The notes under the pieces are model-generated. The model made no database searches. It was not told the DNA's origin and was given only the letters and a program-made list of their open reading frames with translations. Source: Isurus oxyrinchus (Eukaryota). Taken from it: a stretch of DNA of 64,000 bases. Position numbers and translations under genes: made by a program. Below, one piece after another: positions 10,876 through 62,055 of the stretch (its first letter is position 1; each line of letters begins with the position of its first letter). The DNA lies in assembly GCA_026770705.1 (NCBI GenBank), contig JANJGN010000052.1, positions 496,001-560,000 of the forward strand, given 5' to 3'.

Positions 10876-11574
10876 TTCTGTGCGTGGTCTGCAATGTCCT
10901 AAGTGCATTCTAGGCACAGCCCAAGATTCCGCCTGATGTCTGTGTAACAACAACATCATGTACATGTCGAGAATAATTCTCACTGTGTTGGTGCAGCAAG
11001 ACAGTTTTGGAATGGCACCACCACTGGCAGGAGTGTGCAGCTGCAATGTGACGTGTTTACATTGAAAATTTCCATTATAAAGATGGCCACAGGAATTCAT
11101 CTGACTGGAAAAAGTGACAACATGAAATAATGTCTTTGAGCCAAGAATCTGGCAGCAAAATAAGAATTTTAATCCATAAGTATCTACAGAAAAGGCTGAA
11201 CATTTTAATCACTTGTGTTAATCAATGTAATTTTATTCATAACCCAAATGCTTCTTACAATCTATCGCAGCATGAAAAAGGTGCAGCATTCAGAAAGCAC
11301 ATTCCAATCAGAGAACAGAGTTTAGCAATGTCACATTTCTGTTCATTCCTATTTGACCATGTTGGCTGCACACAGCCAGACAATGCCGTGGTTATGATGT
11401 GTCCACACAGCAGGACTGGGGAGCACCAGGTATAAGGAAAAGTTTCAGCTTGCTGAGGAGAAGAAGGAGAATCTCTCGTTCCAGGTTTCTCTCCGTACAT
11501 TAAGAAGCAGGCATGCCGATGTTTCATTGCACTCTGTCTGCTGATGGGAGTCCGCTTGGAAATTGCTGTTTGTG

Positions 11575-12195
11575 CTGATGGAAAGAATAAGCTTTTCATA
11601 AATCGAGGGATTGAGTACAAACACAGGGAGGTTATGCTGAACATTTATAAAGCTCTGGTTAGGTCACAGCTAGAGTATTGTGTCCAGTTCTGGTCTCCTC
11701 ACTTTGGGAAGGAAGTGAGGGTCCTTGAGAGGGTGGGGAGGAGATTGAGCAGAATGGGTCCAGGGATGAGGGATTTTAGCTACAAGGTTGGGTTGGAGAA
11801 GCTGGGGTTGTTCTCCTTGGAGCAAAGGAGATTGAGGGGGGATCTGATCGAGGTGTACAAGATGATGATGGGTTTAGATACGGTAGACAAAGAGAAGCTG
11901 TTGCCATTAGCTGATGGGACAAGGACTGGGGGACACAGATTGAAGGTTGTGGGCAGTGGGGGGATGTGAGGAGGAACTTTTTTACACAGCGAGTGGTAAT
12001 GAGCAGGAACTCGCTGCCTGCGAGGATGGTGGAAGTGGAGACGATGAACGATTTCAAACAGAAATTGGTTGGACACTTGGAAATAAACATGCAGGGATAC
12101 GGGGATAGAGCGGGGGAATGGGACTGAGTGGATTGCTCTACACAGAGACAGCATAGACTTAATGGGCTGAATGGTCTCCTACTGTGCTGGAATGC
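11575..12195 (+). mobile_element. CR1-like LINE 3' fragment (inverted copy at ~50280-50885)
   Basis: YKALVRSQLEYCVQFWSP..LFSLEQRRLRGDLIEVYK. Confidence 0.85.
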
Positions 12196-12310
12196 CTCTC
12201 TGATACGAAGGTGATTCTAACCAGGACACTGACCAGTTTCATTACAACTTAACACAACATCACACGTTATTTGTCCGCACTGACTGACCAGATTGTTGCT
12301 GTACAAAGCT

Positions 12311-12450
12311 TCAAACAGTCTGTCGACTTCCTTTCACTGTTTGTCTCTCCCAGACACAGACTCCAGTGATAGTGATAACCACAGCCACAAGGAATATCAC
12401 AGCTCGTATTCCCAGGATCAGGATCACATGCAGAATCTCTCCTCCACTGT
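12311..12450 (-). pseudogene. TM/terminal exon with intramembrane Arg (gene B)
   Basis: Phase-1 acceptor ttctctag; SGGEILHVILILGIRAVIFLVAVVITITGVCVWERQTVKGSRQTV*. Confidence 0.75.
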
Positions 12451-27800: not shown

Positions 27801-30800
27801 CTGGAAATAAAAGCCGCTGTGTTACTGTTCAGAAACTGTTATTAATTGTGTTCTGGTCACTATTTTCCCTGAAAAACAGATTCTCTGATTGTCATCAAAA
27901 TACCTTTCTATGGATCCTGCTGTACATTATCTACACTGTTCCAGCTAATGTAGAATGAAGGGTGTCTATACTTACATTGCACAGTTAGTACGAGGGTCCG
28001 CTCCGATGAAACAGATGGATATCTCACTCTGCAGCTGAGAGTGTGTCCGTGGTGTTTGAGTGATGGGGTCAGGGTCAGAACAGAAGTATAGGTCAGAGAG
28101 ACACCATGCTGAGTTACAGTGTTTGAGACTGATCCAGGTACGTCAGTGGGAGTGTCCCAGGTTAAGACAGGTGCTGCTGTTCCATTGCACGTTGTGTTGA
28201 AGGTGCAGCTTACATCCACACGCTTTCCAGCAATAATTTCAGCAGGGAATATCGTGGGTTTATCTGTGAAATCTAACAGACAGAGAATGGATCCTTTTAG
28301 ACAAATATAACGTGAAGCATCAGTTCAAATAGAAATCACAGTCCCACACGAGAAAGCATTTTTACAAGGATGATATCAGATCTGAGAGGTTACAATGATC
28401 AGGAAAGATTTTCTTGCTCTTTGGCAGTAGTGTTTCTGTCTCTCAGCTTAATACACGTTCACTCCGAGACATGTGAATTGAGAACACTGGATGAGAGAAG
28501 AGGCTCAGACCAGAGATTGGAGTTAAAAGCAGAATACTGCGGATGCTGGAAATCTGAAACCAAAACAAAAATTGCTGGAAAGACTCAGCAGGTCTGACAG
28601 TATCAGTGGAGAGGAAGACAGGGTTAACGTTTCGAGTCCGTATGACTCTTCATCAGACCAGAGGTTTGAGTTCACTGGCTTCTCATTTCCTCAGTGATCT
28701 GGGTGATTTATCACCTTGTGGTTTGTTGGATCTTGCTGTGCACAAACTGCCTGCTGTGTTTTACATCTGTGACTACAATTCAGGAATAATTTCATTGGCT
28801 GTGAAGGGATTTGGATCCTCCTGAGGTGGTAAATTGCGCTGCAGAAATGCACATCTTTCTTTTATCGATAAGTCAGACTTTTAAACAGGACAGGAGAGAT
28901 TGATGGGAGTGGATAACCTGATAATACAGTTAATGCTTTTCATCATTGATATTAAAGTGAGTATTAGAGGTTGCTTTAGGACTGAACTGGAAGCTATCAC
29001 CAGGTTATTGAGAATCAGACAGTGTGTTATAATAAGCTGCGTTTTGTGTTAATATGTAAACATCACAGTTTGTGTTATTTCCCATTGAGTGTTGAATGTG
29101 AATTGTTGAGTAATTATAACACAGCACTTACCAGAAACGTGAAGCTGGGTTACAGGGTAATAGTTATAGCTCGGACCATTGTCAAATTCTATCCTGAAAA
29201 AATAAGGTCCCGCATCTTCCCGTCTGATGTTGTTTATAATCAGGGAACAGTCGCCATCTTTCAGGTCTCCAGACAGCCAGGTCCGATGGTGGAACCGTGG
29301 TAACTCGTGACTGTGATCCTTGGAGTGAAAGGCAATGGGAGCCCAGGGAATCTGTTTCTCGTTATTAAACCAGACTCCACCTCGCGGTTGGTTTTCCAAA
29401 TGTGATGGATAACTGTAATGACATGGAATCTGTACACACGAACCTTCCTGCGCTGTCACCTCTCGTGGAGTGTCACCTTTCCACTCTTGTGACAGTCCAA
29501 CTGGGGAGAGAAATATCAATATTTAACTCTGGATGGTTTGTGGATCCACTAGACTCGATATCCACTCCCTCCATCACTGGGGCACAGTGGCTGCAGTGTG
29601 GAACTTCTACAGGACACACAAGGAACTCCCCAAGGTTTCACAATGGATAGAAGAGAATCCTGGACACAGGAGTGGACAAGTTCATTCTACATTGGCTCAT
29701 GGTCCTCAGGACCCTGTTTAGTGAAGCCAGTGAGACAGTGTCACTGTGCCTTGTATTATAATGCTCCTGTGTAGCCCCTTGGATTGTTTTTTTTTACAGT
29801 TAAGGCACTATGTAAATATAATCTATTGCTCTATGCTCATCTGGACCATTTGAATTCTTAAGTTCAAGTGGCCTGGTGACAGCTTCATGTTCAGTCCAAA
29901 TGCAGCCTCTAATTATCACTTTAATGTCAATGATTAAATGTGACCCAACACAGTGTCTACAAGACGCACCAATTGAGATCCATTCAGTGCTGATTTACAA
30001 GACAGGACAATGGATTAGGAGCCCTCAGAACTCCCTCCATTATCACCGTCATGAATCACTAATTAGCCTAACATTCCTGTCTGCTCTTCAACACAGCTGA
30101 TTGGCTAATCTGATTCAATCTGATTGGTGCACTTTGGACCTTCATGTTCTGAGGAATCTCTTTGGATCCTCATTGTTTAAGGAATCTCATTGGATCCTCA
30201 TTGTCTAAGGGATTATTTCTGATCCAAACCCCATATTGTTGTATTGTTGATTCCGATGCAGCATTGTAGACTGACTTGTCCCCAAGCTCAGCACTGACCC
30301 TACTCCAGCAGACACTGTGAAACACACTAACAAAGCGCCTCTAGCCTGAGCTCTGCATGTGTCGAGAGAAAGACAAATATACAAACTGAATATTGACACC
30401 TTTACACACGGACAGCTTTACCTTCCTTCTCTCTTTCAGTTATCTTGCTCCCTTATTGAAGTATCTAGCAAGGTGAGAATGGACAGGAAGTGTGACACTG
30501 AACAGCCTGTCTATTCTAGGAGCTGCTGTGCTGTCTTCATGGGAAATTCTGAATAAAATCAGCAAAAGACACATTTCAGGATATTGCTATCAGACACCTA
30601 ACATAGGGAGAGACTTCATCCTCCAGTTTTTATCCCTGATTTTCTACTCAACCTTTTACCACCCTTCCCCCCATCCACACTGACTTACATAGGCTCCCAG
30701 TCAAGCAGTGCCTCCATTTTAAGATTCTCATGCTCAATTCCCAATCCCCCCAACCCCCTCTCCAGTCCCGACCTCTGTAACCTCATCCAGCCCCTTCAAC

Positions 30801-32894: not shown

Positions 32895-35098
32895 CCTGTA
32901 CTGAAGAGGTGCTGCACTGTCAGAGGGTCAGTACTGAGGGAGTGCTGCACTGTCAGAGGGTCAGTACTGAGGGAGTGCTGCACTGTCAGAGGGTCAGTAC
33001 TGAGGGAGTGCTGCACTGTCAGAGGGTCAGTACTGAGGGAGTGCTGCACTGTCAGAGGGTCAGTACTGAGGGAGTGCTGCACTGTCAGAGGGTCAGTACT
33101 GAGGGAGTGCTGCACTGTCAGAGGGTCAGTACTGAGGGAGTGCTGCACTGTCAGAGGGTCAGTACTGAGGGAGTGCTGCACTGTCAGAGGGTCAGTACTG
33201 AGGGAGTGCTGCACTGTCAGAGGGTCAGTACTGAAGCAATGCTGCACTGTCAGAGGGTCAGTATTGAGGGAGTGCTGCACTGTCAGAGGGTCAGTATTGA
33301 GGGAGTGCTGCACTGTCAGAGAGTCAGTACTGAGGGAGTGCTGCACTGTCAGAGGGTCAGTACTGAAGCAATGCTGCACTGTCAGAGGGTCAGTACTGAA
33401 GAGGTGCTGCACTGTAAGAGGGTCAGTACTGAGGGAGTGCTGCACTGTCAGAGGGTCAGTACTGAGGGAGTGCTGCACTGTCAGAGGGTCAGTACTGAGG
33501 GAGTGCTGCACTGTCAGAGGGTCAGTACTGAAGCAATGCTGCACTGTCAGAGTGTCAGTACTGAGGGAGTGCTGCACTGTCAGAGGATCAGTACTGAGGG
33601 AGTGCTGCACTGTAAGAGGGTCAGTTCTGAAGCAATGCTGCACTGTCAGAGGGTCAGTACTGAGGGAGTGCTGCACTGTGGGAGGGTCAGTACTGAGTGA
33701 GTGCTGCACTGTCAGAGGGTCAGTACTGAAGCAATGCTGCACTGTCAGAGGGTCAGTACTGAGGGAGTGCTGCACTGTCAGAGGGTCAGTATTGAGGGAG
33801 TGCTGCACTGTCAGAGAGTCAGTACTGAGGGAGTGCTGCACTGTAAGAGGGTCAGTACTGAAGAGGTGCTGCACTCTAAGAGGGTCAGTACTGAGGGAGT
33901 GCTGCACTGTCAGAGGGTCAGTACTGAGGGAGTGCTGCACTGTCAGAGGGTCAGTACTGAGGGAGTGCTGCACTGTAAGAGGGTCAGTACTGAGGGAGTG
34001 CTGCACTGTCAGAGGGTCAGTACTGAGGGAGTGCTGCACTGTCAGAGGGTCAGTACTGAGGGAGTGCTGCACTGTCAGAGGGTCAGTATTGAGGGAGTGC
34101 TGCACTGTCAGAGAGTCAGTACTGAAGAGGTGCTGCACTGTAAGAGGTTCAGTACTGAAGCAATGCTGCACTGTCAGAGGGTCAGTACTGAGGGAGTGCT
34201 GCACTGTGGGAGGGTCAGTACTGAGCGAGTGCTGCACTGTCATAGGGTCAGTACTGAGTGAGTGCTGCACTTTCAGAGGGTCAGTACTGAGAGAGTGCTG
34301 CACTGTCAGAGGGTCAATGCTGAGGGAGTGCTGCACTGTGGGAGAGTCAGTACTGAGGGAGTGCTGCACTGTCGGAGGGTCAGTACTGAGGCAGAGCTGC
34401 ACTGTCAGAGGGTCAGTACTGAGGGAGTGCTGCACTGTCAGAGGGTCAGTACTGAGGGAGTGCTGCACTGTAAGAGGGTCAGTACTGAAGCAATGCTGCA
34501 CTGTCAGAGGGTCAGTACTGAGGGAGTGCTGCACTGTAAGAGGGTCAGTACTGAAGCAATGCTGCACTGTCAGAGGGTCAGTACTGAGGGAGTGCTGCAT
34601 TGTCAGAGGGTCAGTACTGAGGGAGTGCTGCACTGTCAGAGGGTCAGTACTGAGGGAGTGCTGCACTGTCAGAGGGTCAGTACTGAGGCAATGCTGCACT
34701 GTCAGAGGGTCAGTATTGAGGGATTGATGCACTGTCATAGGGTCAGTACTGAGGGAGTGCTGAACTGTCATATGGTCAGTACTGAGTGAGTGCTGCACTG
34801 TCAGAGTTTCAGTACTGAGAGGGTGCTGCACTGTCAGAGGGTCAATGCTGAGGGAGTGCTGCACTGTGGGAGAGTCAGTACTGAGGGAGTGCTGCACTGT
34901 CGGAGGGTCAGTACTGAGGCAGAACTGCACTGTCAGAGAGACAGTACTGAGGGAGTGCTGCACTGCCAGAAGTTCAGTACTGAGGGAATGCTGCATTATC
35001 GGTGGGTCAGTACTGAGGGAGTGCTGCACTGTCAGAGGGTCAGTACTGAGGAAGTGTTGCACTGTCAGAGGGTCAGTACTGAGGGAGTGCTGCACTGT
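32895..35098 (+). repeat. Largest 33-bp minisatellite array (~2.2 kb, about 66 units)
   Basis: Homogeneous units; source of the spurious 735-aa and 487-aa ORFs. Confidence 0.97.
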
Positions 35099-42182: not shown

Positions 42183-45100
42183 ATAATTGGGAAATATTAC
42201 TGCCTCCTGTCACTTCTCCAAGGTAATATCATCGTCAGCTCAGACAGATTTATGGTTAATAGTCTTCGTAAAAGATCATTCTTATTGAGCTGTGATTCGG
42301 AACCAATTCAGCAGTGAGCCAGTGCACAAACTCACACCAAGTCCCATTCACCCATCACCCCTGTGCTCCCTGATATACACTGACTCCCTGTCTGACAGCA
42401 GAATTGGGGGAGTGCAGAGATCACAGAGGGTTGTAGGTTTGAGTAGGTTACAGAGACAGGGAGTGGAGCGGAGTGATGGAGGGATTGGAAATCAAGTGTG
42501 AAAATAATCACATCGAGGTGTTGTTGGACTGGGAGCCAGTGTAGGTCAGCGAGTGACTTGTGGGGTCGGGGTGGGTGTGTGCGGAGGTGAAAGCTTGAGT
42601 GGAAAATTGGACACAAAATTCAGGGGATGAAGTCTATCTTGTGGCTAGGACTCTGACAGCAATGGCCTGAAATTAGTGTCTTTTGCTGATTTTAGTCAGA
42701 ATTTCCCATGAAGACAACACAGCAGCTCCTAGAATAGACAGGCTGTTCAGTGTCACACTTCCTGTCCATTCTCACCTTGCTAGATACTTCAATAAGGGAG
42801 CAAGATAACTGAAAGAGAGAAGGAAGGTAAAGCTGTCCGTGTGTAAAGGTGTCAATATTCAGTTTGTATATTTGTCTTTCTCTCGACACATGCAGAGCTC
42901 AGGCTAGAGGCGCTTTGTTAGTGTGTTTCACAGTGTCTGCTGGAGTAGGGTCAGTGCTGAGCTTGGGGACAAGTCAGTCTACAATGCTGCATCGGAATCA
43001 ACAATACAACAATATGGGGTTTGGATCAGAAATAATCCCTTAGACAATGAGGATCCAGGGTTAAATATTGATATTTCTCTCCACAGTTGGACTGTCACAA
43101 GAGTGGAAAGGTGAAACTCCACGAGAGGTGACAGCGCAGGAAGGTTCGTGTGTACAGATTCCATGTCATTACAGTTATCCATCGTGTCTGGAAAACCAAC
43201 AACGAGGTGGAGTCTGGTTTAATAATGAGGAACAGATTCCCTGGGCTCCCATTGCCTTTCACTCCAAGGATCACAGTCACGAGTTACCACGATTCCACCA
43301 TCGGACCCGGCTGTCTGGAGACCTGAAAGATGGCGACTGTTCCCTGATTATAAACAACATCAGACGGGAAGATGCAGGACCTTATTTTTTCAGAATAGAA
43401 TTTGACAATGGTCCGAGCCATAACTATTACCCTGTAACCCAGCTTCACGTTTCTGGTAAGTGCTGTGTTATAATTCCTCAACAATTCACATTCAACACTC
43501 AATGGGAAATAACACAAACTGTGACGTTTACACATTAACACAAAATACAGTTTATTATAACACACTGTCTGATTCTCAATAACCGGGTGATAACTTCCAG
43601 TTCAGTCCTAAAGCAACCTCTAATACTCACTTTAATATCAATGATTAAATGTATTGACTGTGTCCATCAATGTTATCAGGTTATCCACTCCCATTAGTCT
43701 CCCTAATGCTTTTTAAAAGTCTAACAATTTGACAAAAGAAGGATGTGCATTCCTATAGCGCCTTACACCACCTGAGCAAACTTCAAATCACTTCACAGAC
43801 AATGAAGAAATTCTTGAAGTATAGTCACTGTCTAACGTGGCAGTGAGTTTGTGCACAGGAAGATCCCACAGAGAGCAATGGGATCAGTGACCCAGATCTC
43901 TGAGAGAATGATGAGCCAGGGTTCCATGAGCTGTGGGCTGCTCCATCACCCACACCCCAGTGTTGGCAATTCAAGGGTCTGGGAGTGAAAGTGTATTCAG
44001 CTCAGTGACACATTCCTCACCAAGTTTGAAAATAGGAAAGTTGCTGCTGATTGTTGTTACCTCTCAGTTCCCATCTCATCCTTGGAAACCTGCTTTCAAA
44101 ATACAAAACCAAGTCTCACATTTCCATAGCGCCTTTCACCACCTCAGGACGATCCTAAATCAATTCACAGTCAATGAAGTGATTCTTGAAGCACACATTC
44201 TCCCCACTCTCTGGGTAAAGAACTTTCTCCTGAATTCCCCATTGGATTTATTAGTGAGGATCTTATATTGTCAGCCTCTGGTTTTGTTCATTGTGAGGAG
44301 TGGAAACACTCTCTCCATGTCTACTCGATCAAAACCTTTCATTACTTCAAAGGTCAAATGAGGTCACCCCCTCAGCCTTCTCTGTTCAAGAGAACAGAGA
44401 CCCAGCCTGTTCATCCTCTCCTGATAGGTAAAGCCTCACATTGCTGAGATCATCCTTGTGAAGCTTTTTACCACCCTCTCCAGTGTCTCCATATCCTTTT
44501 CCAAATGCTGAGTCTGTTCTCCCCGAGCTGTGAGCTGTTCCTCCACCCTCACCCAGTCTGGTCAAATCAAGGGTCACTGAGTGAGAGTGTATTAATCTGA
44601 GTGACAGAGATTCAACAAGTGTAAAAATAGACAATTCTTTAATGATCATTGTAACCTCTCAGTTCTGATATCATCCTTGTAAAAGTGCTTTCTCGTGTGG
44701 GACTGTGATTTCTATTTGAACTGATGCTTCACGTTATATTTCTCTAAAAGGATCCATTCTCTGTGTGTTTGATTTCACAGATAAACCCACGATATTCCCT
44801 GCTGAAATTATTGCAGGAAAGCGTGTGGATGTAAGCTGCACCTTCAACACAATGTGCAATGGAACAGCAGCACCTGTCTTAACCTGGGACACTCCCACTG
44901 ACGTACCTGGATCAGTCTCAAACACTGTAACTCAGCATGGTGTCACTCTGACCTATACTTCTGTTCTGACCCTGATCCCATCACTCAAACACCACGGACA
45001 CACTCTCAGCTGCAGAGTGAGATATCCATCTGTTTCATCGGAGCGGACCCTCGTACTAACTGTGCTATGTAAGTACAAACACCCTTCAATCTACATTAGT

Positions 45101-48100
45101 TGGAATAGTATCAAATGTGCACAGCAAGCTCCCACATACTGCACTTTGTTTATAAACAAACCATTGGTATTTAACTGGTAAAAAGTGAGCCCTGACAGGC
45201 AGTACATCCTTACTACTGACTCTCCGATAGTGCATCATGGACTCATAGACTCATAGACACTTACAGGACAGAAGGAGGCCATTTAGCCCATCATGTCCAT
45301 GCTGGTCAGCAACTCCCTCCCCAAGTGCATCACCTCATATTTTTCCAGGTTGAATTCCATTTGCGTCGTGATCATTTCCCCTTTATATAAGTCCAATTCA
45401 TTTATATACACCACAAACAGCAAGTGCCCCAGCACTTTGCCCTGTGGAACCCCACTGGAAACAGACATCCAGTCACAGAAACATCCCTCCACCATCACCC
45501 TCTGCTTCCTGCCTCAGCCAATATTGGATCCAACGTGCCACTTTGCCTTGGATCCCATGGGCTCTTACTTTCTTGGCCTCTCTGCCAAGAGGCACCTTAT
45601 CAAAAGCCTTCCTCAGCCCATGTCGACCACATCAAAGGCATTACTCTCATCAACACTCCTGGTTACTTCCTCAAAAGATTTGATCAGGTTTGTCAAACAT
45701 GACCTTCCCTTAACAAATCCATGCTGAATATCCCAGATTAATCCTTGTCTCTCCCAGTGCAGATTCATTCTGTCCTTCAGAATTCTTACTAGTAACTTCC
45801 CCACCACCGAGGTTAGACTGACTGGCCTGTAATTTCCTGATCTATCCCTTCCTCCCTTTTTTAATAATGGGACAACATGAGCCATCCTCCAGTCCTCTGG
45901 CACCTCACCTGTGGCCAGAGAGGATTTGAAAATTACTGCCAGGGCCCCTGATATCTCTTCCCTTGCCTCCCTCAACAGCTTTGGATTCATCTCATCCGGG
46001 CTTGTGGATTTATCCACTTTTCAGGCCGTTAAATCCACTAGTACCTCCTCTCTCTGTGTTAATTTCCTCTCATATTTCACTGTCCTCCACCCTGATGTTA
46101 TACCTGCATCATCCTTTTCCATTGTGAAGACTGATGCAAAGTATTCATTGAGGACTGTACCCACGTCTTCCAGGTCCACACACACATTACCTCGATGGTC
46201 CCTAATCGGCCCCACTCTTTCCCGAGTTATTCTGCTGCTCTTTACATATTTAAAAAACCCCTCTGGGTTTTGCTTTATTCTACCCACCAGTGCTTTCTCA
46301 TGCACTCTCTTATCTTTCCTAATGTCCTTTTTCAATTCCCCTCTGCACTATTTATACTCCTCTAGGGACTCTGCTGTATTGAGCCCTCAGTATCTGCCAT
46401 AAGCTTCTCTTTTTTCTCAATCCTAACCTTTATGTTCCTTGTCTTCCAGGGTTCTCCAGACTTGGTCTCCCTCTTTGTCTTTACAGGAAGATATCTGCTC
46501 TGTACTCTCGCTATTCCCTCCTTGAATGCCTCCCACTGCTCTGACACAGTTTTATCTGCAAAGAGCTTCTCCCAGTCCACTTGGGCCCAATCATATCTCA
46601 TCTTAGTAAAATTAGCCTTTCCCCAGTTTAGAATTTTTATTCCCAGCACAAACTTATCCTTCTCCATAACTGTCCTAAATCCAATTGAGTTACAGTCACC
46701 ATCTCCCCTACTGATACGCTTTCCAACTTCCCCGGCGCTTTTCCATATATTAGGTCCAGAACTGTCCCCTCCCTTGTTGAGCTTTCTATGCACAGGCTAA
46801 AAATCTTCTCCTGGATGCAACTTCAGAATTTTTCTCCCTCCCTACCTTGCTCACTAAAGCTGTCCCAATTAATATTTAGGTAGTTAAAATCCCTGAGTAT
46901 TACTGCTTTATTATTCTTACACATCTCTGAAATGTGATCACATGTTGGATTGTCCATCTCTCCCTGACTGTTTGTTGGTTTTATATCTTGAGTCTATGAG
47001 TTCACTGGTTGAGTAAACTCGAATTGCACTCCTTCATATACACTTGTTAGTTGATAAAAACAAAAAAACTGCGGATGCTGGAAATCCAAAACAAAAACAG
47101 AATTACCTGGAAAAACTCAGCAGGTCTGGCAGCATCGGCGGAGAAGAAAAGTGTTGACGTTTCGATTCCTCATGACCTCAGTTCTGTCGAAGGGTCATGA
47201 GGACTCGAAACATCAACTCTTTTCTTCTCCCCCGATGCTGCCAGACCTGTTGAGTTATTCTTAGCTGATGCTCGCTATCAATAACCAAGAGAGACCTACA
47301 TTAGAACAAGCTGATTATTTATTGTAACAGAGGGCAGAGCACTAAATCCTTGCATGCTCCCACAGCCACCTCCAGCTCTAGACTTACAGTTAACCAGTGG
47401 CCCACACTGTCCAGTGATTGGTCAGTACTGTCACATGGTTTATCCACTTGTATTCTCTTAAAGGTACCTGGCACTCCACATTATCACAGGAGGCCTATAG
47501 TACACACATAACAGCGTGTTTGCCTCCTCAGCACTGACCCTTCTACAGTGCAGCACTCCCTCATTACTGTCTCTCTAATAGTGTAATGATCCCTCAGTAG
47601 TGCTCCTCCAACATTGCACTGGTCAATCAGAACTGACGCTCTGACTGTGCAGTTTTACCTCAGCAGTAACCCTCCTACAGTGCAGCGCTCCCTCAGGACT
47701 GACCCTCTGACAGTGCAGCACTCCCTCAGTACTGAACCTCTGGCAGTGCAGCACTCCCTCAGTACTGACTCTCTGACAGTGCAGCACTCCCTCAGTACTG
47801 ACCCTCTAACAGTGCAGCACTCCCTCAGTACTGACTCTCTGACAGTGCAGCACTCCCTCAGTACTGACCCTCTGACAGTGCAGCACGCCCTCAATACTGA
47901 ACTGAAGTGTCTGCCTGGATTATGGGCTATGTGGAGAAAGAACCTACATTGACATCACACCTTTCACATTCTCAGTGTCTTTCAAAGTGCTTCACAGTCA
48001 GTCTAAGTTAACTGATCTGTATTTGTTTTTAGACGCACCACGGAATCTCTCAATTACTTCTCCAGATATGATTAACGCTTCATCAATCAGTATAATTGAG

Positions 48101-52124: not shown

Positions 52125-55100
52125 CAGTCGCACAATGGGAATGGCACTAGGCCAGTGATCCAGAGGCCCAGGTGAATGCTTTGGAGGTAAGGGTTCAAAT
52201 CCCACCACGGCAGCTGCAGGAATTTAGATTCGATTAATCAATAAATTTAATTGATTGATACATTTTTTTCTTATTCATTTCAGGGATGTTGGTGTTGCTG
52301 ACTAGGCCAGTATTTGTTGCCCATCCCCAATTGCCTTTGAGAACATATGGATATCTGAGTTAGGATCAGGAGTAGGTCACTCAGCCCCTCGAACCTGCTC
52401 CGCCATTCAGTAAGATCATGGCTGATCTGATTGTCACCTCAACCTCACATTCCTGTCTACCCCCAATGACCTTTCATCCCCTTGTTAATCAAGAATCTAT
52501 CTAGCTCTGCCTTAAAAATATTCAAAGACCCTGTTTCCACTGCCTTTTGAGGCAGAGTGTTCCAAAGACTTACTACCCTCTGAGAGAAAACATTTCGCCT
52601 CATCTCTATCTTAAATGAGCGACCCCTTATTTTTAAACCATGACCGCCTAGTTCTAGATTCTCACACAAGAGGGAACATCCTCTCCATATCCACCCTGTC
52701 AAGACTCCCCTGGATCTTAAAAGTTTTAATTAAGTTGCCTCTTACTCTTCTAAACTCCAGTGGATACAAGCCTAACCTGTCCAACCTGACCTCATAAGAC
52801 AACCCGACCAATCCTGGTATTAGTCTAGTAAACCTTCTCTGAACTGCTTCTAATGCATTTACATCTTTCTTTAAGTAAGGTGACCTTACTGTACAGAGTA
52901 CTCCAGATGTGGTCTCACCAGTGCCCTGTACAACTGAACGTAACCTCCCTACTTTTCTATTCAATTCCCCCACAGTAAATTCTAACATCCCATTAGCTTT
53001 CCGATTGACCTGCTGTATCTGCAAACCAGCCTTTTGTGATTCATGCACGAGGACACCCAGATCCCTCTGCATCTCAGAGCTCTACCATTTTAGTTACCTT
53101 TTAGATAATAATCTTCCTTCTTGTTCCTTCTGACAAAATGAACAATTTCACATGCGCCCACATTATACACCATTTGTCAGATCTTTGCCCACTCACTTAA
53201 CCTATCGATGTCACTTTCTAACCACCTTACATCCTCTTCACAATTTACTTTCCAACCTATCTTTGTGTCAGCAGCTCATTTAGCCGCCATTCCTGGGCAG
53301 TCCAGGTGCTTCTCCACCGAGGTTCAAATGAGCACAGTTTATATATTTTTTACTCTCAGTTACAACGTAATGGTATTAGTTAGACAAAGGCCACAGCACA
53401 ATGACCCTCCAGTGGGCTGATAATTGTGTTCTTGTACAGTAATTACAGGGCAGAGACTGGCTATTGTCCTTTAGAGACAGCAAAGAATCTATGTTTGTTC
53501 GCTACAAAAGGTTTCCGGAGGCTGACTGGATGTGGTTCAAGGCCATCGGAGGGTGTGAAATAACCTTCCCCATTTCTTGATTGAGTCACCCTGTGTCCTT
53601 GTGTGTGTGTCTCCCATTTCCTCATTGCAAATTTACAGCTGAGCCCTTTGTACAGGTTTTTAGCTTTCACGTAAGGATGTGATTGTCTGTGTACGCTTTG
53701 TCACCCTAGCTGCTGGTCCTGGCTGGCTCTTTAAAATAAATCCAAATTTTCTGCACCTTCAATGAGATTCTCTCTTGTTGGAGCTGGTCATTGCCTGGCA
53801 CTTGTGTGGCATGAATGTTACTTGTCACCTGTCAGCCCAAGCCTGGATGTTGTCCAGGTCTTGCTGCATTTGGACATAACTTGCTTCAGTATCTGAGGAG
53901 TCGTGAATGATGCTGAACATTGTGCAATCATCAGCAAACATCCCCACTTCTGACCTTATGATGGAAGGAAGGACATTGATGAAGCAGCTGAAGATGGTTG
54001 AGCCTAGGACACTACCCTGAGTAACTCCTGCAGTGATGTCCTGGAACTGAGATGATTGACCCCCAATAATCACAACCATCGTCCTTTGTGCTGGGTATGA
54101 CTCCAAGCAGCAGAGAGTTTTCCCCTGATTCCCATTGACTCCAGTTTTGCTCGGGCTCCTTGTTTTGCCACATTCAGTCAAATGCTGCCTTGATGTCAAG
54201 GGCAGTCCCTCTCACCTCTGGAGTTCAGCTCATTTGTGCATGTTTGAACCAAGGCTGTAATGAGGGCAGGAGCTGAATGATCCTGGTGGAACACAAACTG
54301 AGCGTCAGTGAGCAGGTTCTTGCTAAGCAGGTGCTGCTTGCAAGCGCTGTTGATGACCCCTTCCATCACTGTAGTAATGATCAAGAATAGACTGCTGGGG
54401 AATTGGCTGGGTTGGATTTGTCCTGCTTTTTGTGTACAGGACGTATCCCATAGCCGGGTAGTTGCCAGTGTTGCAGCTGTACTAGAAAATTCCAGAAAAG
54501 CTTGGCTAGGGGCGCAGCAAGTTCTGGAGCACAAGTCTTCAGTACTATTGCCAGAATATTGTCAGGGCCTGGTGCCTTTGCAATATCCAGTGCCTTCAGC
54601 CCTTTCTTGATGTCACGTGGAATTAATCGAATTGGCTAAAGAAAGGCATCTGTGATGCTGGGGACCTCCGGAGGAGGCCGAGATGGATCACCCACTCAGC
54701 ACTTCTGGCTGAAGATTGTTGTGCATGCTTCAGTCTTGTCTTTTGCACCGATGTGCTGGGCTCCTCCATCATTGAGGATGGGGATATTTGTGGAGCCTCC
54801 TCCTCCAGTGAGTTGTTTAATTGTCCACGACTGGATGTGACATCTGGAATGCGAAGCTAGTTTCAGTAATGGTGACCATGAAACTAAGGCCAATTGTTGC
54901 AAAAACCCATCTGGGTCACTAATGCCCTTTGGGGAAGGAAACCTGCCGTCCTTACCCATTCTGGCCTACGTGTGACTCCTGACCCACAGCAATGTGGTTG
55001 ACTCTTAACTGGCCCCTGAAATGGCCGAGCAAGCCACTGAGTTATATCAAAACCCGCCACAGACCAGTCAAACCAGGTGAACTGCAGCACTTCGAAAAGG

Positions 55101-57060: not shown

Positions 57061-57363
57061 ACGTGAGGTGAATAGTGTCGATGTATTTAAGGGGAAGCTG
57101 GATAAACACACGAGGGAGAAATGAATAGAAGGATATGGTGATGGGGTGAGATGGAGAAGGGGTGGGCGGAGACTCGTGTGGAGCAGAAACACCAGCCGGG
57201 AGCAGATGGGCCGAATGGCTTCTTTCCCTGCTGTAAAACGCAGGTAAAGTTTCAGTTGGAATTAATGAACAGGGCCTGTGTGAAATAGATTGCTAAGCAG
57301 TAGATAAGGAGGGGAGAGGCTGTGGCATGGTGCAGGATGACCTTGCATGAATGAGGCCAGGGT

Positions 57364-57480
57364 CTAAAATATGCAGCAGATACCACAAGTCTCATTTGGT
57401 TCTCTCCAATTACAGCAGTTACAGCAGAATCTGCAGTGCCGCTGTCTGCTCATTCTGTTCTGGCGCTGCAGCAAGGAGCC
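57364..57480 (-). CDS. HAMP: Hepcidin exon 3 (mature peptide)
   Basis: Acceptor cttttccag; 38 codons + TAG; eight cysteines. Confidence 0.93.
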   Translation of the reverse strand, partial: GSLLQRQNRMSRQRHCRFCCNCCNWREPNETCGICCIF

Positions 57481-60400
57481 CTGGAAAAGCAGGAGGACAA
57501 TAGGTGAGAACATTCCGGAAAGAAAGAAGGCATCATTTCAATCAGGCGCGTCATTGGAAGGAGGATGGCGCATTTCTATAGCGCCTTTCCCCTCCTCAGG
57601 ATGGCCCAAAGTGTTCCACAGCTGAAGGAAGGACTTTTTCTGAAGTGAGCTCACCGCTGTAATGTAGGAAACGCAGCAGGCAATTCACGCACAGCAAGAT
57701 CCCACAAACAGAAATGTGATAATGGCCCCGATTTTCAGTTTTTTACCAATGTCAGTTGAGGGATAAATGTTTGCCCCAGGAAAGTGGACATAACTCCACC
57801 CCATCCAGCCCCCACCACCCCCTCCACACATACCCCCCAACTCCTGACGCACTTCATTTAAATTGTGGCCATGGAATCCTCTACATCCATCTGAGAGGGC
57901 AGATGTTGTCTCAGTTTAACATCTCATCTGAAAGACAGCGCCTTCAACAGTGCAGCACCCCCTCAGTACTGACCCTCCGACTGTGCAGCACTCCCTCAGT
58001 ACTGACCGTCTGACAATGCAGCACCCCCTCAGTACTGACCCTCCAACAGTGCAGCACTCCCTCAGTACTGGCCGTCTGACAATGCAGCACCCCCTCAGTA
58101 CTGACCCTCCGACTGTGCAGTCCCCCGCCGGTACTGATCCTCTGACAGTGCAGCACTCCAAGACTGACCGTCTGACAATGCAGCACCCCCTCAGTACTGA
58201 CCCTCCGACTGTCCTGCCCCCCCGCCGGTACTGACCCTCCGACAGCTCGGTAATTTCTCAATTATGCCTGGTGGTCCTTTTAACTCAGAGCTGAGAGTTG
58301 CAGAGAATCGAGCACACATCCTGAACTGACACTTGCAGTGCAAGTACTGGGAGCGCGCTGGTCATTATCATGCTGCTGTCTGTGGGATCTTACTGTGCGC
58401 CAATGGCTGATTCTTTTCCCACAGTACATCAGTGACCTCACATGAAAGAAAAAAAGCACTTGATTGTCTGCGAAACACTTTGGGACGTCCTGATGTGTTG
58501 GAAGGCGCTAGAGAAATGCAAGTCCTCTTTGTCTTTCACTCGATCCTCTAAGGTGTCTGTTGATTAACCAGCCTCTCGGTGTATGATGTAGGCCTGGTTA
58601 TAAACAGTTAGAAGGATCAAATATCAAAAGTGCTTTGGCTGACAGTCAAACCGATTGTGCATTCGGAGAGATTAGATATGGTCTGCACACAATGACTCCA
58701 GTCTCTGGCACTGACTGCCGCCTGGGGTCTCCCTTCCACATAACACTCACAACTTGCATTTACACAGCGCCTCTGACATTGCAAAATGTCCCAGCCCACA
58801 TTACCGGAGCGTAAATCAGAGAGAAGTCTAACACTGAGTCACATATGGAGATATTAGGGTTAGGTGACCAAAAGCTTGGTCAAAGATGTCAGTTTTTAAG
58901 GAGCGTCTTAAAGGAGAGAGAGAGAGAGAGAGAGAGAGGCAGAGAGGTTAAGGGAGGGTATTCCGGAGCTCAGGGCCCCAGGCAGCTGAAGGCACGGCCA
59001 CCAATGGTGGAGCGATGGGAATCAGGGGGACCCGGGAGATGCAGTAATGTCAGAGATTTTGGAGGAACATCGGGACCGGAGGAGGTGTTCTCCTGCTCCA
59101 TATCTCTCTCTCTCTTCCTCTCATCCACTCCTCCTCTCCCTGTCTCTCTCTCTCCTACTCTTCCGCTCAATTGCCCTCTCTCCCAATCTTTCTCTCCTCT
59201 CTCCCTTTTCCTGTCTCTCTCCCTCTCTCTCCCCTGTCTCCTTCTCCCACTCTGTATCTCTCCCTCTCTCTCACACTATTTTTGTACCTTTCGCTCACTC
59301 TGTAACTCTCCCTTTCTTGTTAATTTCTCTCTCTTGGACAATCTCTCTTCCCTTTTCACTTTCCCTCACTCTGCATCTCTTTAATTTCTCCCTCTGTCAC
59401 TCTCTCCCACCTATGTTCTTTCCCTTTCACCCCTCCCCGTCCCACTCTCTGTCTCTCTCTTCCAATCCCTCCCTCCCCCATTCCATCCCTCTCTCCGACT
59501 CTCGACTCCCAGCCTCTCTTTAACCCACTCCCAGGCTGGATCAGTCTCCCTCTCACTATTCCCGGCGTGGGTTACATTTAAAATTCCTGTGGGGATATGT
59601 TCACTTCCTTGGAATTGCCTCTTCCCAGCTTTGCAAAAAAAGAGGTGGGGGGGGCTCGATTTCAAACATGCCTCCTGAGTATAACCGAGACAGACTGCCA
59701 CTGAAATCAGCTTGAAATCAGAAAACTTTCTGTGGAAGAAACGAGCAGGGAGAAACCTTAAAATAAGGAATGAATTTCCACCTACCGTGTCCGGGGAATC
59801 CACAGATTTCTCAATCGTCGAAGAACCTAAAGCAGTGTCAACCTGCAAAAAGAAAGAATTTATCAGGGAGAAAGTGAGAGGAGGATTGAGGGAGAGGGAG
59901 AGAGAGAGAGAGAGGTACAGGAGAGAGAGGGGGAGGAAGACAGACTTGCATTTCCCTAACGCCTTTCACCACATCCCAAAGCATTTCACAGCCACTGAAG
60001 GATGTTTTTGAAGTGCACTCACACTGTAGGAAATGTGGCAGCTGATTTGTGCACAGCAAGATCCCACAAATAGCAATGTGATCATGGCCTAGATCATCTG
60101 TTTTTGGTGATGTTGGTTGAGGGATAAATATTGGTCCCAGGACACCGGGGAGAACACCCCCTGCTCTTCCTCCAAATAGTGGCTGTGGGATCTTTCACAC
60201 CCGCCCGAGAGGGCAGACGGGGGACTCGGTTTAATGTCTCATTCAACATTGTTGCGCTCCCTCAGTACTAACCCTTTGACACTGCAGCACTCCCTTAGTA
60301 TTAACCCTTCGATAGTGCTGCGCTCCCTCAGTACTGTCCCTCCGTCAGTGCAGCTCTATTTCAGTACTAACCCTTCGACACAGCAGCACTCCCTCAGTAC

Positions 60401-61771
60401 TAACCCTTCGATAGTGCTGCACTCCCACAGTATTGTCCCTCCGTCAGTGCAGCGCTCCCTCAGTACTGACCCTCCGACACAGCAGCACTCCCTCAGTACT
60501 GACCTCCGACAGTATAGCACTCACTCAGTACTGTCCCTCCAATAGTGCAACACTTCCACACTACTGACCCTCTGACAGTGCAGCACTCCCTCAGCACGGA
60601 GTGTTGACCGACGTTATGGGACTGAATTCCCTGGAGTGAGACTCAGACCAGAGATTTAGGTAGGGTTGTTCCGGCTGGAGGAGGTTACAGAGATAGGGAG
60701 GGTTGTAGAGGCTGTAGGAGGTAACAGAGATAGGGAGGGTTCTAGAGGCTGTAGGAGGTGACAGAGATAGGGAAGGTTGTAGGGGCTGTAGGAGGTTACA
60801 GAGATAGGGAGGTGAGTAGGGGCTGTAGGAGGTTAATGAGATGGGGGGGGTTGTGGGGGCTGGAGGAGGTTACAGAGGTAAGGAGGGTTGTAGAGGCTGG
60901 AGGAGGTTACCAAAATAGATACTGCTGTAGGGGCCACAGTAGGTTACAGAGATAGGGAGAGTTATAGTGTGGAGAGGACGTTATAGAGTTCATGAGCATT
61001 GTAGGGGCTGGAGGAGGTTACAGTGATTCTGAGGGTCGTGGGGCCTGGAGGAGGTTACAGAGATAGGGAGGGTTGTAGGGTCTGGAGGAGGTTACAGAGA
61101 TAGGGAGGGTTGTAGGGTCTAGAGGAGGTTACAGTGATCATGAGGGTTGTGGGGCCTGGGGGAGGTTACAGAGATAGGGAGGTTTATAGGGGCTGGAGGA
61201 GGTTACAGAGATAGGGAGGGTTGTAGGGGCTGGAGGAGGTTACGGAGATAGGGAGTGTTGTAGGGGCTGGAGGAGGTAACAGAGATAGGGACAGTTGTAG
61301 GGGCTGGAGGAAGTTACAGAGATGGGGATTGTTGTAGGGACTGGAGGAGGTTACAGATATAGGGAGGGTTGTAGCGGCTGGAGGAGGTTACAGAGATAGG
61401 GAGGGTTGTAGGGGCTGGAGGAGTTTACAGAGATAGGGAGGGTTGTACGGGCTGGAGGAGGTTACAGAGATAGGGAGTCGCTGAGGAGGGATTGAAAACA
61501 AGAATGAGAATTTCAGGGGAAATGACAGAAGGAAATGATGTTAAATTCATAGAGGGCGACAATATTAAAGGCACGAACATAATAATATCAAACTGCGGAA
61601 GTGACCAGTCTATCTGGGTGGTAGATGTAGAGTCATGTGCAAGAAACACCTCACCCAGAGGGACATCTCTTAGCTTACCCTCGACAAGGAGAAGAAGTGA
61701 CTCAGCTGCAGGGAGAGCAGCAAAGTCAGAGTGAACAAGACAAGTCGCCATTTCATCTGGGAGCTTCCCAT
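57364..61771 (-). CDS. HAMP: Hepcidin precursor, 3 exons: 61679-61771, 59786-59842, 57364-57480 (88 aa)
   Basis: MGSSQMKWRLVLFTLTLLLSLQLSHFFSLSR|VDTALGSSTIEKSVDSPDT|GSLLQRQNRMSRQRHCRFCCNCCNWREPNETCGICCIF*. Signal peptide, RxxR site, 8-Cys C-xx-CC-x-CC..CG-x-CC pattern, and phase-0 GT-AG introns. Confidence 0.9.
57560..58245 (-). mobile_element. Deu-domain-type SINE with internal 33-bp array (57945-58245)
   Basis: Minus strand reads ..gctgtctttcagatgagatgttaaactgagac..ctgccctctc, continuous with the repeat unit. Confidence 0.6.
59786..59842 (-). CDS. HAMP: Hepcidin exon 2 (pro-region)
   Basis: ttctttttgcag acceptor, ACG|gtaggt donor, 57 nt, phase 0-0. Confidence 0.75.
59935..60650 (-). mobile_element. 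Deu-domain-type SINE with internal 33-bp array (60245-60600)
   Basis: Same family as 57560-58245. Confidence 0.6.
60665..61480 (+). repeat. 37-bp minisatellite (ggaggaggttacagagatagggagggttgtaggggct) in hepcidin intron 1
   Basis: About 20 tandem units. Confidence 0.9.
61679..61771 (-). CDS. HAMP: Hepcidin exon 1 (signal peptide; alternative in-frame ATG at 61756)
   Basis: Hydrophobic leader, AGG|gtaagc donor, TATA box ~70 nt upstream. Confidence 0.85.
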
Positions 61772-61842
61772 CTCTGCCTGTCTCTTCTGATCTTCTGGCT
61801 CTGCTTTGATGCTTTGGTTTGTAACTAGAGGAGCTTCCTGCT

Positions 61843-62055
61843 CTTATACCTGAAACACTTGAAGGGGACAGCCGCGGGTGGGTAGCTGTGTGGTATCACA
61901 CCCATTTCTGGATATTGCAGTGTCGATGTTCCCTGTCCCACTGGCCTGGGACCAGCAGTAAGGTCACTGGGACATTGACTGTCTGGCGCCGAGAACTATC
62001 AGTCCCTCCGCAACGCCCTTCACCTTGTGCAAATATGTGTTCATATTGATGCAAC
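61843..62055 (-). promoter_or_regulatory. Hepcidin proximal promoter: TATAAG 61843-61848, imperfect STAT-like site ~61905-61915, GGCGCC 61985-61990 abutting Smad box, C/EBP-like sites 62025-62032 and 62047-62054
   Basis: Motif matches read directly from sequence; same element classes as known HAMP promoters. Confidence 0.6.

What the first reader, a model, noticed from the sequence alone, without database searches (positions are those of the whole stretch)
57364..61771. Hidden hepcidin with an expanded, potentially glycosylated loop and atypical N-terminus
Seen: a three-exon gene not recovered by the ORF track. The predicted mature peptide after RQNR is MSRQRHCRFCCNCCNWREPNETCGICCIF. Known: typical hepcidins have about 4 residues between Cys5 and Cys6, and the iron-regulatory forms start DTHFP/QSHL, a segment needed for ferroportin binding. 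Here the loop is 8 residues (NWREPNET) with an N-E-T sequon, the N-terminus is Arg-rich, and two overlapping RxxR sites (RQNR, RMSR) could give 29- or 26-mers. Inference: a divergent, possibly antimicrobial-specialised (HAMP2-like) or glycosylated hepcidin.
Basis: partly seen in the sequence, partly recalled or inferred. Interest (0 to 1): 0.85.

Follow-up and report, generated by a model that had tools for sequence, protein, structure and literature searches.

The report
Long-loop shark hepcidin gene copy
This is a real, intact, correctly spliced three-exon gene for a hepcidin-family peptide lying among Siglec immune-receptor genes; it is a diverged sister of a standard-looking hepcidin made by the same animal, so it probably serves defence or some other role, not iron control, though no function was tested.

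Summary
On the minus strand, exons 61771-61679, 59842-59786 and 57480-57364 join in phase 0 into an 88-residue prepropeptide. Exon 3 alone passes the Pfam Hepcidin model (31.1 bits, cut-off 27). Both introns appear as exact GT..AG joints in public contigs: two runs of one sample of the window's species, and one joint in a run of a second organism. The 8-residue Cys5-Cys6 loop, the NET sequon and the two RxxR sites are all present.

New here: one contig from that sample shares this gene's pro-region up to ...RQNRMS, then reads HLSICMYCCG. That is a canonical hepcidin start with His3 and six residues before Cys1. The long-loop gene is therefore a diverged paralogue, not the lineage's only hepcidin, and RQNR is the likely cleavage site, giving the 29-mer.

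Its core (CRFCCNCC..PN..CGxCCxF) matches sea bass Hamp2, which does not regulate ferroportin. Hamp2 also carries a sequon at the same loop position, so the sequon is not new. Net charge is only about +2.

All transcript contigs differ from this copy at 57347 in the 3'UTR, so expression of this particular copy is unproven. The scan has already reported the same gene type many times elsewhere in this genome. Function and glycosylation remain untested.

The parts
61985..61990 (.). GGCGCC, the same hexamer as the BMP-responsive element of mammalian HAMP promoters, about 170 bp upstream of the inferred transcript start
   Evidence: It is the only GGCGCC in the 64-kb window, where 2.05 are expected. 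Its regulatory role is inferred, not tested.
61842..61848 (-). TATA box (TATAAGA)
   Evidence: Read from the sequence. It lies about 27-33 nt upstream of the 5' end of the spliced contig (record 16).
61772..61815 (-). 5'UTR (minimum extent)
   Evidence: X4 contig record 16 matches 61677-61815 with 0 differences and continues into exon 2. A contig end does not prove a transcript start.
61679..61771 (-). Exon 1 coding part: 31 aa with a hydrophobic signal-peptide core (LVLFTLTLLLSL); the ATG is in a strong Kozak context (GCAGAGATGG)
   Evidence: joint confirmed.
59843..61678 (-). Intron 1 (GT..AG), holding a 33-bp satellite (60257-60594) and a 37-bp satellite (60657-61477)
   Evidence: Joint 59842|61679 in 11 contigs of X1 and 1 of X4; tandem repeats.
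59786..59842 (-). Exon 2: 19 aa of pro-region (VDTALGSSTIEKSVDSPDT)
   Evidence: both flanking joints.
57481..59785 (-). Intron 2 (GT..AG), with a 33-bp satellite (57947-58245). A minor cryptic acceptor at 58593 gives a truncated reading frame.
   Evidence: Joint 57480|59786 in 9 contigs of X1 and 1 of X4. A 1-base variant of it is in X1 and X5. The alternative joint 58593|59786 is in 1 contig. Tandem repeats.
57364..57480 (-). Exon 3 coding part: the end of the pro-region, the cleavage sites, the mature peptide and the stop codon
   Evidence: Pfam Hepcidin 31.1 bits, E 3e-7, residues 5-38 aligned to profile positions 24-53.
57445..57465 (-). Overlapping minimal proprotein-convertase motifs RQNR (57465-57454) and RMSR (57456-57445)
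   Evidence: Read from the sequence. RQNR is favoured because, in the canonical-type paralogue, cleavage there would place His at position 3 (loose end at 57448).
57367..57453 (-). Predicted 29-aa mature peptide with eight Cys
   Evidence: The best solved-structure match is bass hepcidin 1S6W, with the extra residues falling in the loop.
57388..57411 (-). Expanded Cys5-Cys6 loop NWREPNET; the NET sequon is at 57388-57396
   Evidence: alignment: CRFCCNCC----PNmSGCGVCCRF against this peptide. The loop has 8 residues here, 5 in sea bass Hamp1 and Hamp2, and 4 in human hepcidin (established knowledge).
57250..57363 (-). 3'UTR (minimum extent; it probably runs to about 57070, past a weak AATACA at 57087)
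   Evidence: X4 contig record 9 covers 57250-57400 and runs on beyond the laid stretch. Poly(A)-signal scan. At 57347 every transcript contig reads G where this copy has A.

Best explanation
This is one intact copy of a multi-copy, transcribed hepcidin paralogue family in a cartilaginous fish, at the ancestral HAMP-Siglec locus. Shown: the three-exon structure, both splice joints, membership of the Hepcidin family, and a canonical-type hepcidin transcript in the same sample that shares the pro-region. Inferred: exon 1 gives a signal peptide. A furin-like convertase cuts after RQNR and releases a 29-residue peptide. That peptide folds into the four-disulfide hepcidin hairpin, with a turn of 8 residues where other hepcidins have 4-5. 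The six residues before Cys1 changed from the canonical M-S-H-L-S-I to M-S-R-Q-R-H. This removes His3 and the hydrophobic positions 4 and 6 that hepcidin-25 uses to bind ferroportin. The core equals teleost Hamp2, which does not regulate ferroportin. The peptide therefore most likely no longer acts as the iron hormone. It probably acts as a secreted host-defence or otherwise specialised peptide, a shark parallel to teleost Hamp2 that arose by an independent duplication.
For: Pfam Hepcidin passes on exon 3 alone. The 8-Cys pattern is unique in the window and absent from 300 simulations. Exact GT..AG joints for both introns are in many contigs of X1 and one each of X4, and a 1-base variant of the intron-2 joint is in X5. 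In X1, summed depth in the exon bins is about 100 times that in unique-intron bins, as expected for mature mRNA, though the tool warns that depth is a poor measure. The loose end at 57448 in X1 reverse-complements, in frame after ...RQNRMS, to HLSICMYCCG. So a canonical start coexists with an identical upstream pro-region. Sea bass Hamp1 is QSHLSLCRWCCNCCRGNKGCGFCCKF and Hamp2 is HSSPGGCRFCCNCCPNMSGCGVCCRF, and only Hamp1 regulates ferroportin (PMC5665920). The best solved-structure match is the Hamp2-type bass hepcidin 1S6W. Neighbouring exons are Siglec/CD22-like Ig domains, as next to human HAMP (MAG and CD22; established knowledge). No difference other than 57368 (last residue F to Y, in a minority) was listed within the mature-peptide codons of the transcript contigs. 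The family's main product is therefore this peptide.
Against: No functional test exists. Net charge is only about +2 (4 Arg, 2 Glu; residues), so the peptide is no more cationic than iron-regulatory hepcidins. The only GGCGCC in the window lies in this gene's proximal promoter, which would fit iron/BMP control. Cys7 and Phe9 are kept, and the length before Cys1 is kept. Neither RxxR site has the basic P2 residue of classical furin sites, so the mature N-terminus is uncertain. All X1 and X4 contigs read G at 57347 where this copy has A, so this particular copy may be silent or may be another allele. That runs X1-X5 are RNA is the tool's guess; the spliced joints are what support it. The canonical-type paralogue rests on one contig's 35-letter overhang.
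Confidence: 0.6

Rival explanations
1. It is, or still is, an iron-regulatory hepcidin. On this view the long loop and altered N-terminus are tolerated lineage-specific changes, and the peptide still closes ferroportin in this animal.
For: A GGCGCC hexamer like the mammalian BMP-responsive element lies about 170 bp upstream of the start, and it is the only one in 64 kb. The locus is the conserved HAMP-Siglec one. Six residues before Cys1, Cys7 and Phe9 are retained. Cartilaginous fish ferroportin already has the hepcidin-binding Cys326 equivalent, and some species have a second ferroportin (PMC8235187), so a second ligand-receptor pair is conceivable.
Against: A canonical-type start (MSHLSIC...) is present in the same sample, so the hormone role is probably filled by that gene. 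His3 and the hydrophobic residues 4, 6 and 8 are replaced by Arg, Gln, His and Arg. The core matches Hamp2, which does not regulate ferroportin in sea bass (PMC5665920).
Confidence: 0.15
2. This particular copy is a silent or redundant recent duplicate. The transcripts seen would then come from near-identical sister copies, and the copy in this window contributes little or nothing.
For: At 57347 (3'UTR) all 29 X1 contigs and the X4 contig read G, not this copy's A. Intron contigs of X1 differ from this copy by about 1-2% (records 1, 3, 4, 5, 8). Many contigs cross the same joints, which indicates several sequence variants. Earlier notes of this scan report many copies in this genome.
Against: The reading frame, both splice-site pairs, the TATA box and the Kozak context are intact. 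An X4 contig matches the 5'UTR and exon 1 of this copy with 0 differences over 139 nt, and another matches intron 2 (57495-57719) with 0 differences. The RNA may come from a different individual, in which case 57347 is a polymorphism. Contigs also drop rare variants.
Confidence: 0.15
3. The loop is N-glycosylated at Asn of NET, which would make this the first glycosylated hepcidin. This reading does not exclude the best explanation.
For: N-E-T is a valid sequon, x is not Pro, and Thr is the better hydroxy residue. It sits on an enlarged turn that is presumably exposed. By established knowledge, the STT3B form of oligosaccharyltransferase can modify sequons very near a C-terminus after translocation.
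Against: The Asn is only 10 residues from the C-terminus and is flanked by disulfide-bonded Cys. Teleost Hamp2 and bass hepcidin carry NMS at the same position. From my memory, not checked here, native bass hepcidin was isolated at the unglycosylated mass. Nothing was tested here.
Confidence: 0.2

Closest known systems
Teleost Hamp2-type hepcidin (sea bass Hamp2 HSSPGGCRFCCNCCPNMSGCGVCCRF; solved bass hepcidin, PDB 1S6W)
   Same: The core CRFCCNCC is identical. Pro-Asn and a sequon sit in the Cys5-Cys6 loop. The tail is CG[IV]CCxF. Six residues before Cys1 lack the Q/D-S/T-H-L/F motif. It coexists with a canonical hepcidin in the same animal.
   Different: The loop has 8 residues, not 5. The N-terminal segment is Arg-rich (MSRQRH), not Ser/Gly-rich. 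It arose by a separate duplication, since its pro-region is shared with the shark's own canonical-type transcript. Antimicrobial activity and lack of ferroportin control are shown for sea bass Hamp2 (PMC5665920) but are untested here.
Iron-regulatory hepcidin (human hepcidin-25 [25 protein letters not shown]; teleost Hamp1 QSHLSLCRWCC...)
   Same: It matches Pfam family PF06446. It has eight Cys in the same order, a three-exon gene with the mature peptide in exon 3, a convertase site before the peptide, and six residues before Cys1. The locus lies beside Siglec genes, as human HAMP lies beside MAG and CD22. A GGCGCC is present in the proximal promoter.
   Different: His3 and the hydrophobic positions 4, 6 and 8 are replaced. 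The loop is doubled. The cleavage motif is only RxxR. Ferroportin binding is not expected by analogy, and was not tested.
Canonical-type hepcidin of the same animal (partial: ...RQNRMSHLSICMYCCG...)
   Same: At least the last 33 coding bases before the point of divergence are identical, the frame is the same, and the spacing to Cys1 and the CC pair is the same.
   Different: Of the next 10 codons, 7 differ, most at two or three bases. The pattern is a conserved prepro part and a strongly diverged mature part. Only 10 codons of that transcript were seen, so its loop length is unknown.

Membership tests
Hepcidin family (Pfam PF06446) | Profile match above the curated gathering score | tested here: met
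   Exon 3 alone scores 31.1 bits against a cut-off of 27, E 3e-7, with residues 5-38 aligned to profile positions 24-53 of 53.
Hepcidin family (Pfam PF06446) | Eight cysteines arranged C-x2-CC-x-CC-x(4-5)-C-x2-CC | tested here: inconclusive
   All eight Cys are present in the right order, but the Cys5-Cys6 spacing is 8, not 4-5. The profile absorbs this as a 4-residue insertion.
Hepcidin family (Pfam PF06446) | Three-exon gene: signal peptide in exon 1, pro-region in exon 2, mature peptide in exon 3 | tested here: met
   Phase-0 GT..AG introns read from the sequence, and both joints found in contigs.
Hepcidin family (Pfam PF06446) | Proprotein-convertase site directly before the mature peptide | tested here: inconclusive
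   RQNR and RMSR are minimal RxxR motifs without a basic P2 residue. Actual cleavage cannot be tested with these tools.
Hepcidin family (Pfam PF06446) | Four-disulfide beta-hairpin fold | tested here: inconclusive
   A single-sequence AlphaFold2 model (pLDDT 71.8, pTM 0.38) gave two helices and is not trustworthy for a disulfide-held peptide. No alignment could be built from the protein databases.
Hepcidin family (Pfam PF06446) | Conserved locus beside Siglec genes (MAG and CD22 in human) | tested here: met
   Neighbouring exons match V-set (46.4 bits), Ig_CD22 (37.4 bits), C2-set_2 and Ig_3 domains. The human gene order is from established knowledge.
Iron-regulatory hepcidin (hepcidin-25 / Hamp1 type) | N-terminal x-[ST]-H-[FL]-[PS]-[IL]-C segment with His3 (ATCUN motif) and hydrophobic positions 4 and 6 | tested here: not met
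   The 29-mer starts MSRQRHC. A 26-mer cut after RMSR would start QRH, with His3 but only three residues before Cys1.
Iron-regulatory hepcidin (hepcidin-25 / Hamp1 type) | Binds ferroportin and causes its internalisation | not testable with these tools
   No shark ferroportin sequence was available by reference, so no complex prediction was attempted.
Iron-regulatory hepcidin (hepcidin-25 / Hamp1 type) | BMP/SMAD-responsive promoter | tested here: inconclusive
   A single GGCGCC lies at 61985-61990 in the proximal promoter, the only one in the window. A hexamer match is not proof of function.
Teleost Hamp2-type (antimicrobial) hepcidin | Hamp2-like mature core without the Hamp1 N-terminal motif | tested here: met
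   CRFCCNCC, PN in the loop and CG[IV]CCxF are shared with sea bass Hamp2 and 1S6W.
Teleost Hamp2-type (antimicrobial) hepcidin | Orthology with the acanthopterygian hamp2 lineage | tested here: inconclusive
   The pro-region is shared with the same animal's canonical-type transcript. This points to a separate duplication in the shark line or to gene conversion. No tree could be built.
Teleost Hamp2-type (antimicrobial) hepcidin | Antimicrobial activity; induced by infection and not by iron | not testable with these tools
   This needs MIC assays and challenge RNA-seq.
N-glycosylated secreted peptide | Sequon N-x-[ST] with x not Pro, in a secretory protein | tested here: met
   NET is encoded at 57388-57396.
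N-glycosylated secreted peptide | The sequon is actually occupied | not testable with these tools
   This needs mass spectrometry with and without PNGase F.

The most novel reading that the evidence does not exclude
The long-loop gene, copied many times and heavily transcribed, is the animal's main hepcidin-derived product and has a function not known for any hepcidin. Examples would be a glycosylated circulating peptide, or a ligand for the second, Cys326-lacking ferroportin found in some cartilaginous fish. On this reading the split between hormone and defence hepcidin arose independently at the base of the jawed vertebrates.
Probability: 0.2. Interest if true: 0.7.

Novelty: new variant of a known kind. 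Interest (0 to 1): 0.45.

Why it matters
Hepcidin is the master iron hormone of vertebrates, and Nemeth and Ganz (PMC8235187) state that it has no known antecedent before fish. I found no paper in the searchable library that describes any shark, ray or chimaera hepcidin sequence.

A shark that makes both a canonical-type hepcidin and a diverged long-loop form from the same locus would show that the hormone/defence split seen in teleosts (Hamp1 and Hamp2) also arose, separately, in cartilaginous fish. It would also provide a natural test of which parts of hepcidin are needed for ferroportin binding: the N-terminal residues against the hairpin. The doubled loop shows how much the hairpin tip can vary.

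Tried and rejected
- The word-indexed protein search with the exon-3 ORF found no candidate. The exhaustive phmmer search of 1.84 billion representatives found nothing, not even a self-like hit. These collections evidently lack this animal's proteins, so the blanks mean nothing.
- The single-sequence AlphaFold2 model of exon 3 came out helical. I discarded it as unreliable for a disulfide-held peptide and ran no fold search on it.
- The one held supplement of the nurse shark plasma proteome paper, which reports hepcidin in plasma, contains no hepcidin entry.
- The minihepcidin paper (PMC3225996) is not held, so statements about residues F4, I6 and F9 rest on established knowledge.
- I looked for other hepcidin pieces in this window. 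BLAST of the promoter with exon 1, of exon 2 and of exon 3 against the window gave only self-hits, so there is one copy here.
- No complex prediction with ferroportin was attempted, because no shark ferroportin was available by reference.
- No search, fold or look-up was run with the joined 88-residue model; all searches were exon by exon, by reference. The exons were joined only inside a local script to check frame, mass and charge.
- 'More cationic, hence antimicrobial' is rejected as an argument, because net charge is about +2.
Full report
**Observation.** The minus strand of 57364-61771 holds three exons in phase 0.
- Exon 1 coding part is 61771-61679. It gives 31 aa, MGSSQMKWRLVLFTLTLLLSLQLSHFFSLSR, with donor AGG|GTAAGC.
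- Exon 2 is 59842-59786. It gives 19 aa, VDTALGSSTIEKSVDSPDT, with acceptor TTTTGCAG| and donor ACG|GTAGGT.
- Exon 3 is 57480-57367 plus the stop at 57366-57364. It gives 38 aa ending ...RQNRMSRQRHCRFCCNCCNWREPNETCGICCIF, with acceptor TTTTCCAG|.
- The first ATG has a strong Kozak context.
- TATAAGA lies at 61848-61842.
- The eight-cysteine pattern occurs once in the six-frame translation of the 64-kb window. It occurs in none of 300 simulated windows.

**Family.** Exon 3 alone matches Pfam Hepcidin (PF06446) at 31.1 bits, E 3e-7, above the 27-bit gathering score. Its 34 residues align to 30 profile positions, which means a 4-residue insertion. Among solved structures the best match is bass hepcidin 1S6W, although the E-value is only 0.51. 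The alignment CRFCCNCC----PNmSGCGVCCRF puts the extra residues in the Cys5-Cys6 turn.

**Transcription and splicing.** I laid the contigs of four public runs on 57250-61950.
- Both predicted introns appear as exact joints with CT..AC ends on the + strand, which is GT..AG on the minus strand.
- Joint 57480|59786 is in 9 contigs of X1 and 1 of X4. Joint 59842|61679 is in 11 contigs of X1 and 1 of X4.
- A variant of the first joint carries one changed base at 59787, making the last residue of exon 2 Met rather than Thr. It is in X1 and in X5, a run of a second organism.
- X1 and X4 come from one sample.
- That these runs are RNA is the tool's guess. The intron-less joints, and summed depth in X1 exon bins about 100 times that of unique-intron bins, support it. 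The tool warns that depth from contigs is a poor measure.
- An X4 contig matches 61677-61815 without a difference and runs into exon 2. The 5'UTR is therefore at least 44 nt, which fits the TATA box.
- A minor joint, 58593|59786 in 1 contig, uses a cryptic acceptor inside a repeat and would end the frame after nine residues.

**Is it this copy?** This cannot be decided.
- At 57347 in the 3'UTR, all 29 X1 contigs and the X4 contig read G where the window has A.
- X1's intron contigs differ from the window by about 1-2%. Some contigs match perfectly: X4 at 57495-57719, and X1 at 57834-57972 and 60266-60412.
- Many contigs cross the same joints, so several nearly identical copies or alleles are transcribed.
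- Within the mature-peptide codons the only listed difference is 57368, which changes the last residue from F to Y in a minority of contigs. The peptide encoded here is therefore the family's main product.
- Earlier notes of this scan report the same gene type many times in this genome, one copy about 28 kb beyond this window. I did not test those. In this window there is only one copy.

**A canonical sister.** One X1 contig matches the window from 57448 upward and has a 35-letter overhang below it (table 7).
- The 30 letters shown, reverse-complemented, read CAC CTC TCG ATC TGC ATG TAC TGC TGT GGC. Position 57448 is the last base of the Ser codon in ...RQNRMS.
- The contig therefore encodes ...RQNRMS-HLSICMYCCG.
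- After RQNR this gives M-S-H-L-S-I-C. That has His at position 3 and six residues before Cys1, as in human D-T-H-F-P-I-C and sea bass Hamp1 Q-S-H-L-S-L-C (PMC5665920).
- Three conclusions follow. Second, the long-loop gene is a diverged paralogue with the same pro-region. Third, RQNR is the likely convertase site, so the 29-mer is the likelier product.
- Aligned without gaps, the long-loop peptide has R-Q-R-H-C-R-F-C-C-N where the sister has H-L-S-I-C-M-Y-C-C-G. The N-terminal segment is substituted, not shortened.
- Identity upstream followed by 7 changed codons out of 10 is the pattern of conserved prepro and diverged mature peptide. By established knowledge this pattern is common in defence-peptide families.
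- This evidence rests on one contig.

**Function (inferred).**
- Ferroportin binding by hepcidin-25 depends on its first nine residues, notably His3, Phe4, Ile6, Cys7 and Phe9. This is established knowledge; the primary paper was not available.
- Here positions 3, 4, 6 and 8 are Arg, Gln, His and Arg. Cys7 and Phe9 remain.
- The core is that of sea bass Hamp2 (HSSPGGCRFCCNCCPNMSGCGVCCRF). In vivo, Hamp2 does not regulate ferroportin, whereas Hamp1 does (PMC5665920).
- I therefore think loss of the hormone role is more likely than not, and I would call this a functional analogue of Hamp2.
- Three points argue for caution. Net charge is only about +2 (4 Arg, 2 Glu). The only GGCGCC hexamer in the window, the sequence of the mammalian HAMP BMP-responsive element, lies about 170 bp upstream of the start. 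Some cartilaginous fish have a second ferroportin (PMC8235187).

**Glycosylation.** NET is a valid sequon on the enlarged turn. However, Hamp2 and 1S6W have NMS at the same place, so the sequon is not new. The Asn is 10 residues from the C-terminus and lies between disulfide-bonded Cys. Occupancy is untested, and I put it at about 0.2.

**Surroundings.**
- The rest of the window is a cluster of Siglec/CD22-like genes. V-set exons lie at 185-655, 3832-4269, 14571-14987 and 29049-29519 on the minus strand, and at 43068-43538 on the plus strand. C2-set and Ig_3 exons accompany them.
- These have been copied in both orientations at 84-96% identity. One inverted pair spans 3.5 kb (10524-14023 against 51970-48448, 89.8%).
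- Human HAMP lies beside MAG and CD22 (established knowledge), so this is the ancestral locus.

**Literature.** No paper in the searchable library gives a chondrichthyan hepcidin sequence. The nurse shark plasma proteome paper reports hepcidin as a plasma protein without a whale shark orthologue (PMC9207270). Subscription journals are not covered.

**Limits.**
- The protein database searches were blank, which means nothing here.
- The single-sequence structure model was helical and was discarded.
- No search, fold or look-up used the joined 88-residue model. Exons were searched one by one, by reference, and were joined only in a local script for frame, mass and charge.

**Verdict.** This is a real hepcidin-family gene of a diverged, long-loop type. 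It is one copy of a transcribed multi-copy family beside a canonical-type hepcidin. It is probably not the iron hormone, and its function and glycosylation are untested. The scan has already reported this gene type on other DNA of the same genome.

Noticed in passing
window 1-52000 (V-set exons 185-655 -, 3832-4269 -, 14571-14987 -, 29049-29519 -, 43068-43538 +): A cluster of Siglec/CD22-like genes whose V-set exons carry the YFFRIEF motif with the conserved Arg. They are duplicated in direct and inverted orientation at 84-96% identity. One inverted pair spans 3.5 kb (10524-14023 against 51970-48448, 89.8%).
   Followed up: partly
window 26470-27765, 32898-35098, 22794-23451, 10437-10875, 57947-58245, 60257-60594: A 33-bp satellite (consensus about CAGCACTCCCTCAGTACTGACCCTCCGACAGTG) forms arrays of up to 2.2 kb. 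It also sits in both hepcidin introns, and it creates long spurious ORFs on both strands.
   Followed up: no
window 60657-61477: A 37-bp tandem repeat of 22 copies (82% matches) lies inside hepcidin intron 1.
   Followed up: no
window 57250-61950, run X6 (second organism): X6's contigs are unspliced, as DNA would be. They cover the hepcidin introns, exon 1 and exon 2 at word depths of about 500-1600 in a run of only about 4 billion letters, yet exon 3 and the 3'UTR are almost uncovered (depth 3-8). This could mean very many copies in that organism, many of them lacking or differing in exon 3. The library type is unknown.
   Followed up: no
window 58593-59785 (minus strand): One X1 contig joins exon 2 to a cryptic acceptor at 58593 inside intron 2. 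This exonises repeat sequence and would stop the frame after nine codons.
   Followed up: partly
window 59787: A transcript variant in X1 (listed depth higher than that of this copy's own joint) and in X5 has the + strand base A where the window has G. This changes the last codon of exon 2 from ACG (Thr) to ATG (Met), so it is a sister copy or an allele.
   Followed up: no
window 23553-24101, 24681-25031, 45613-46017, 52662-54199: ORFs that look like fragments of reverse-transcriptase-type (LINE-like) retroelements are scattered between the Siglec genes and the hepcidin gene. This is judged by eye only; no family search was run on them.
   Followed up: no
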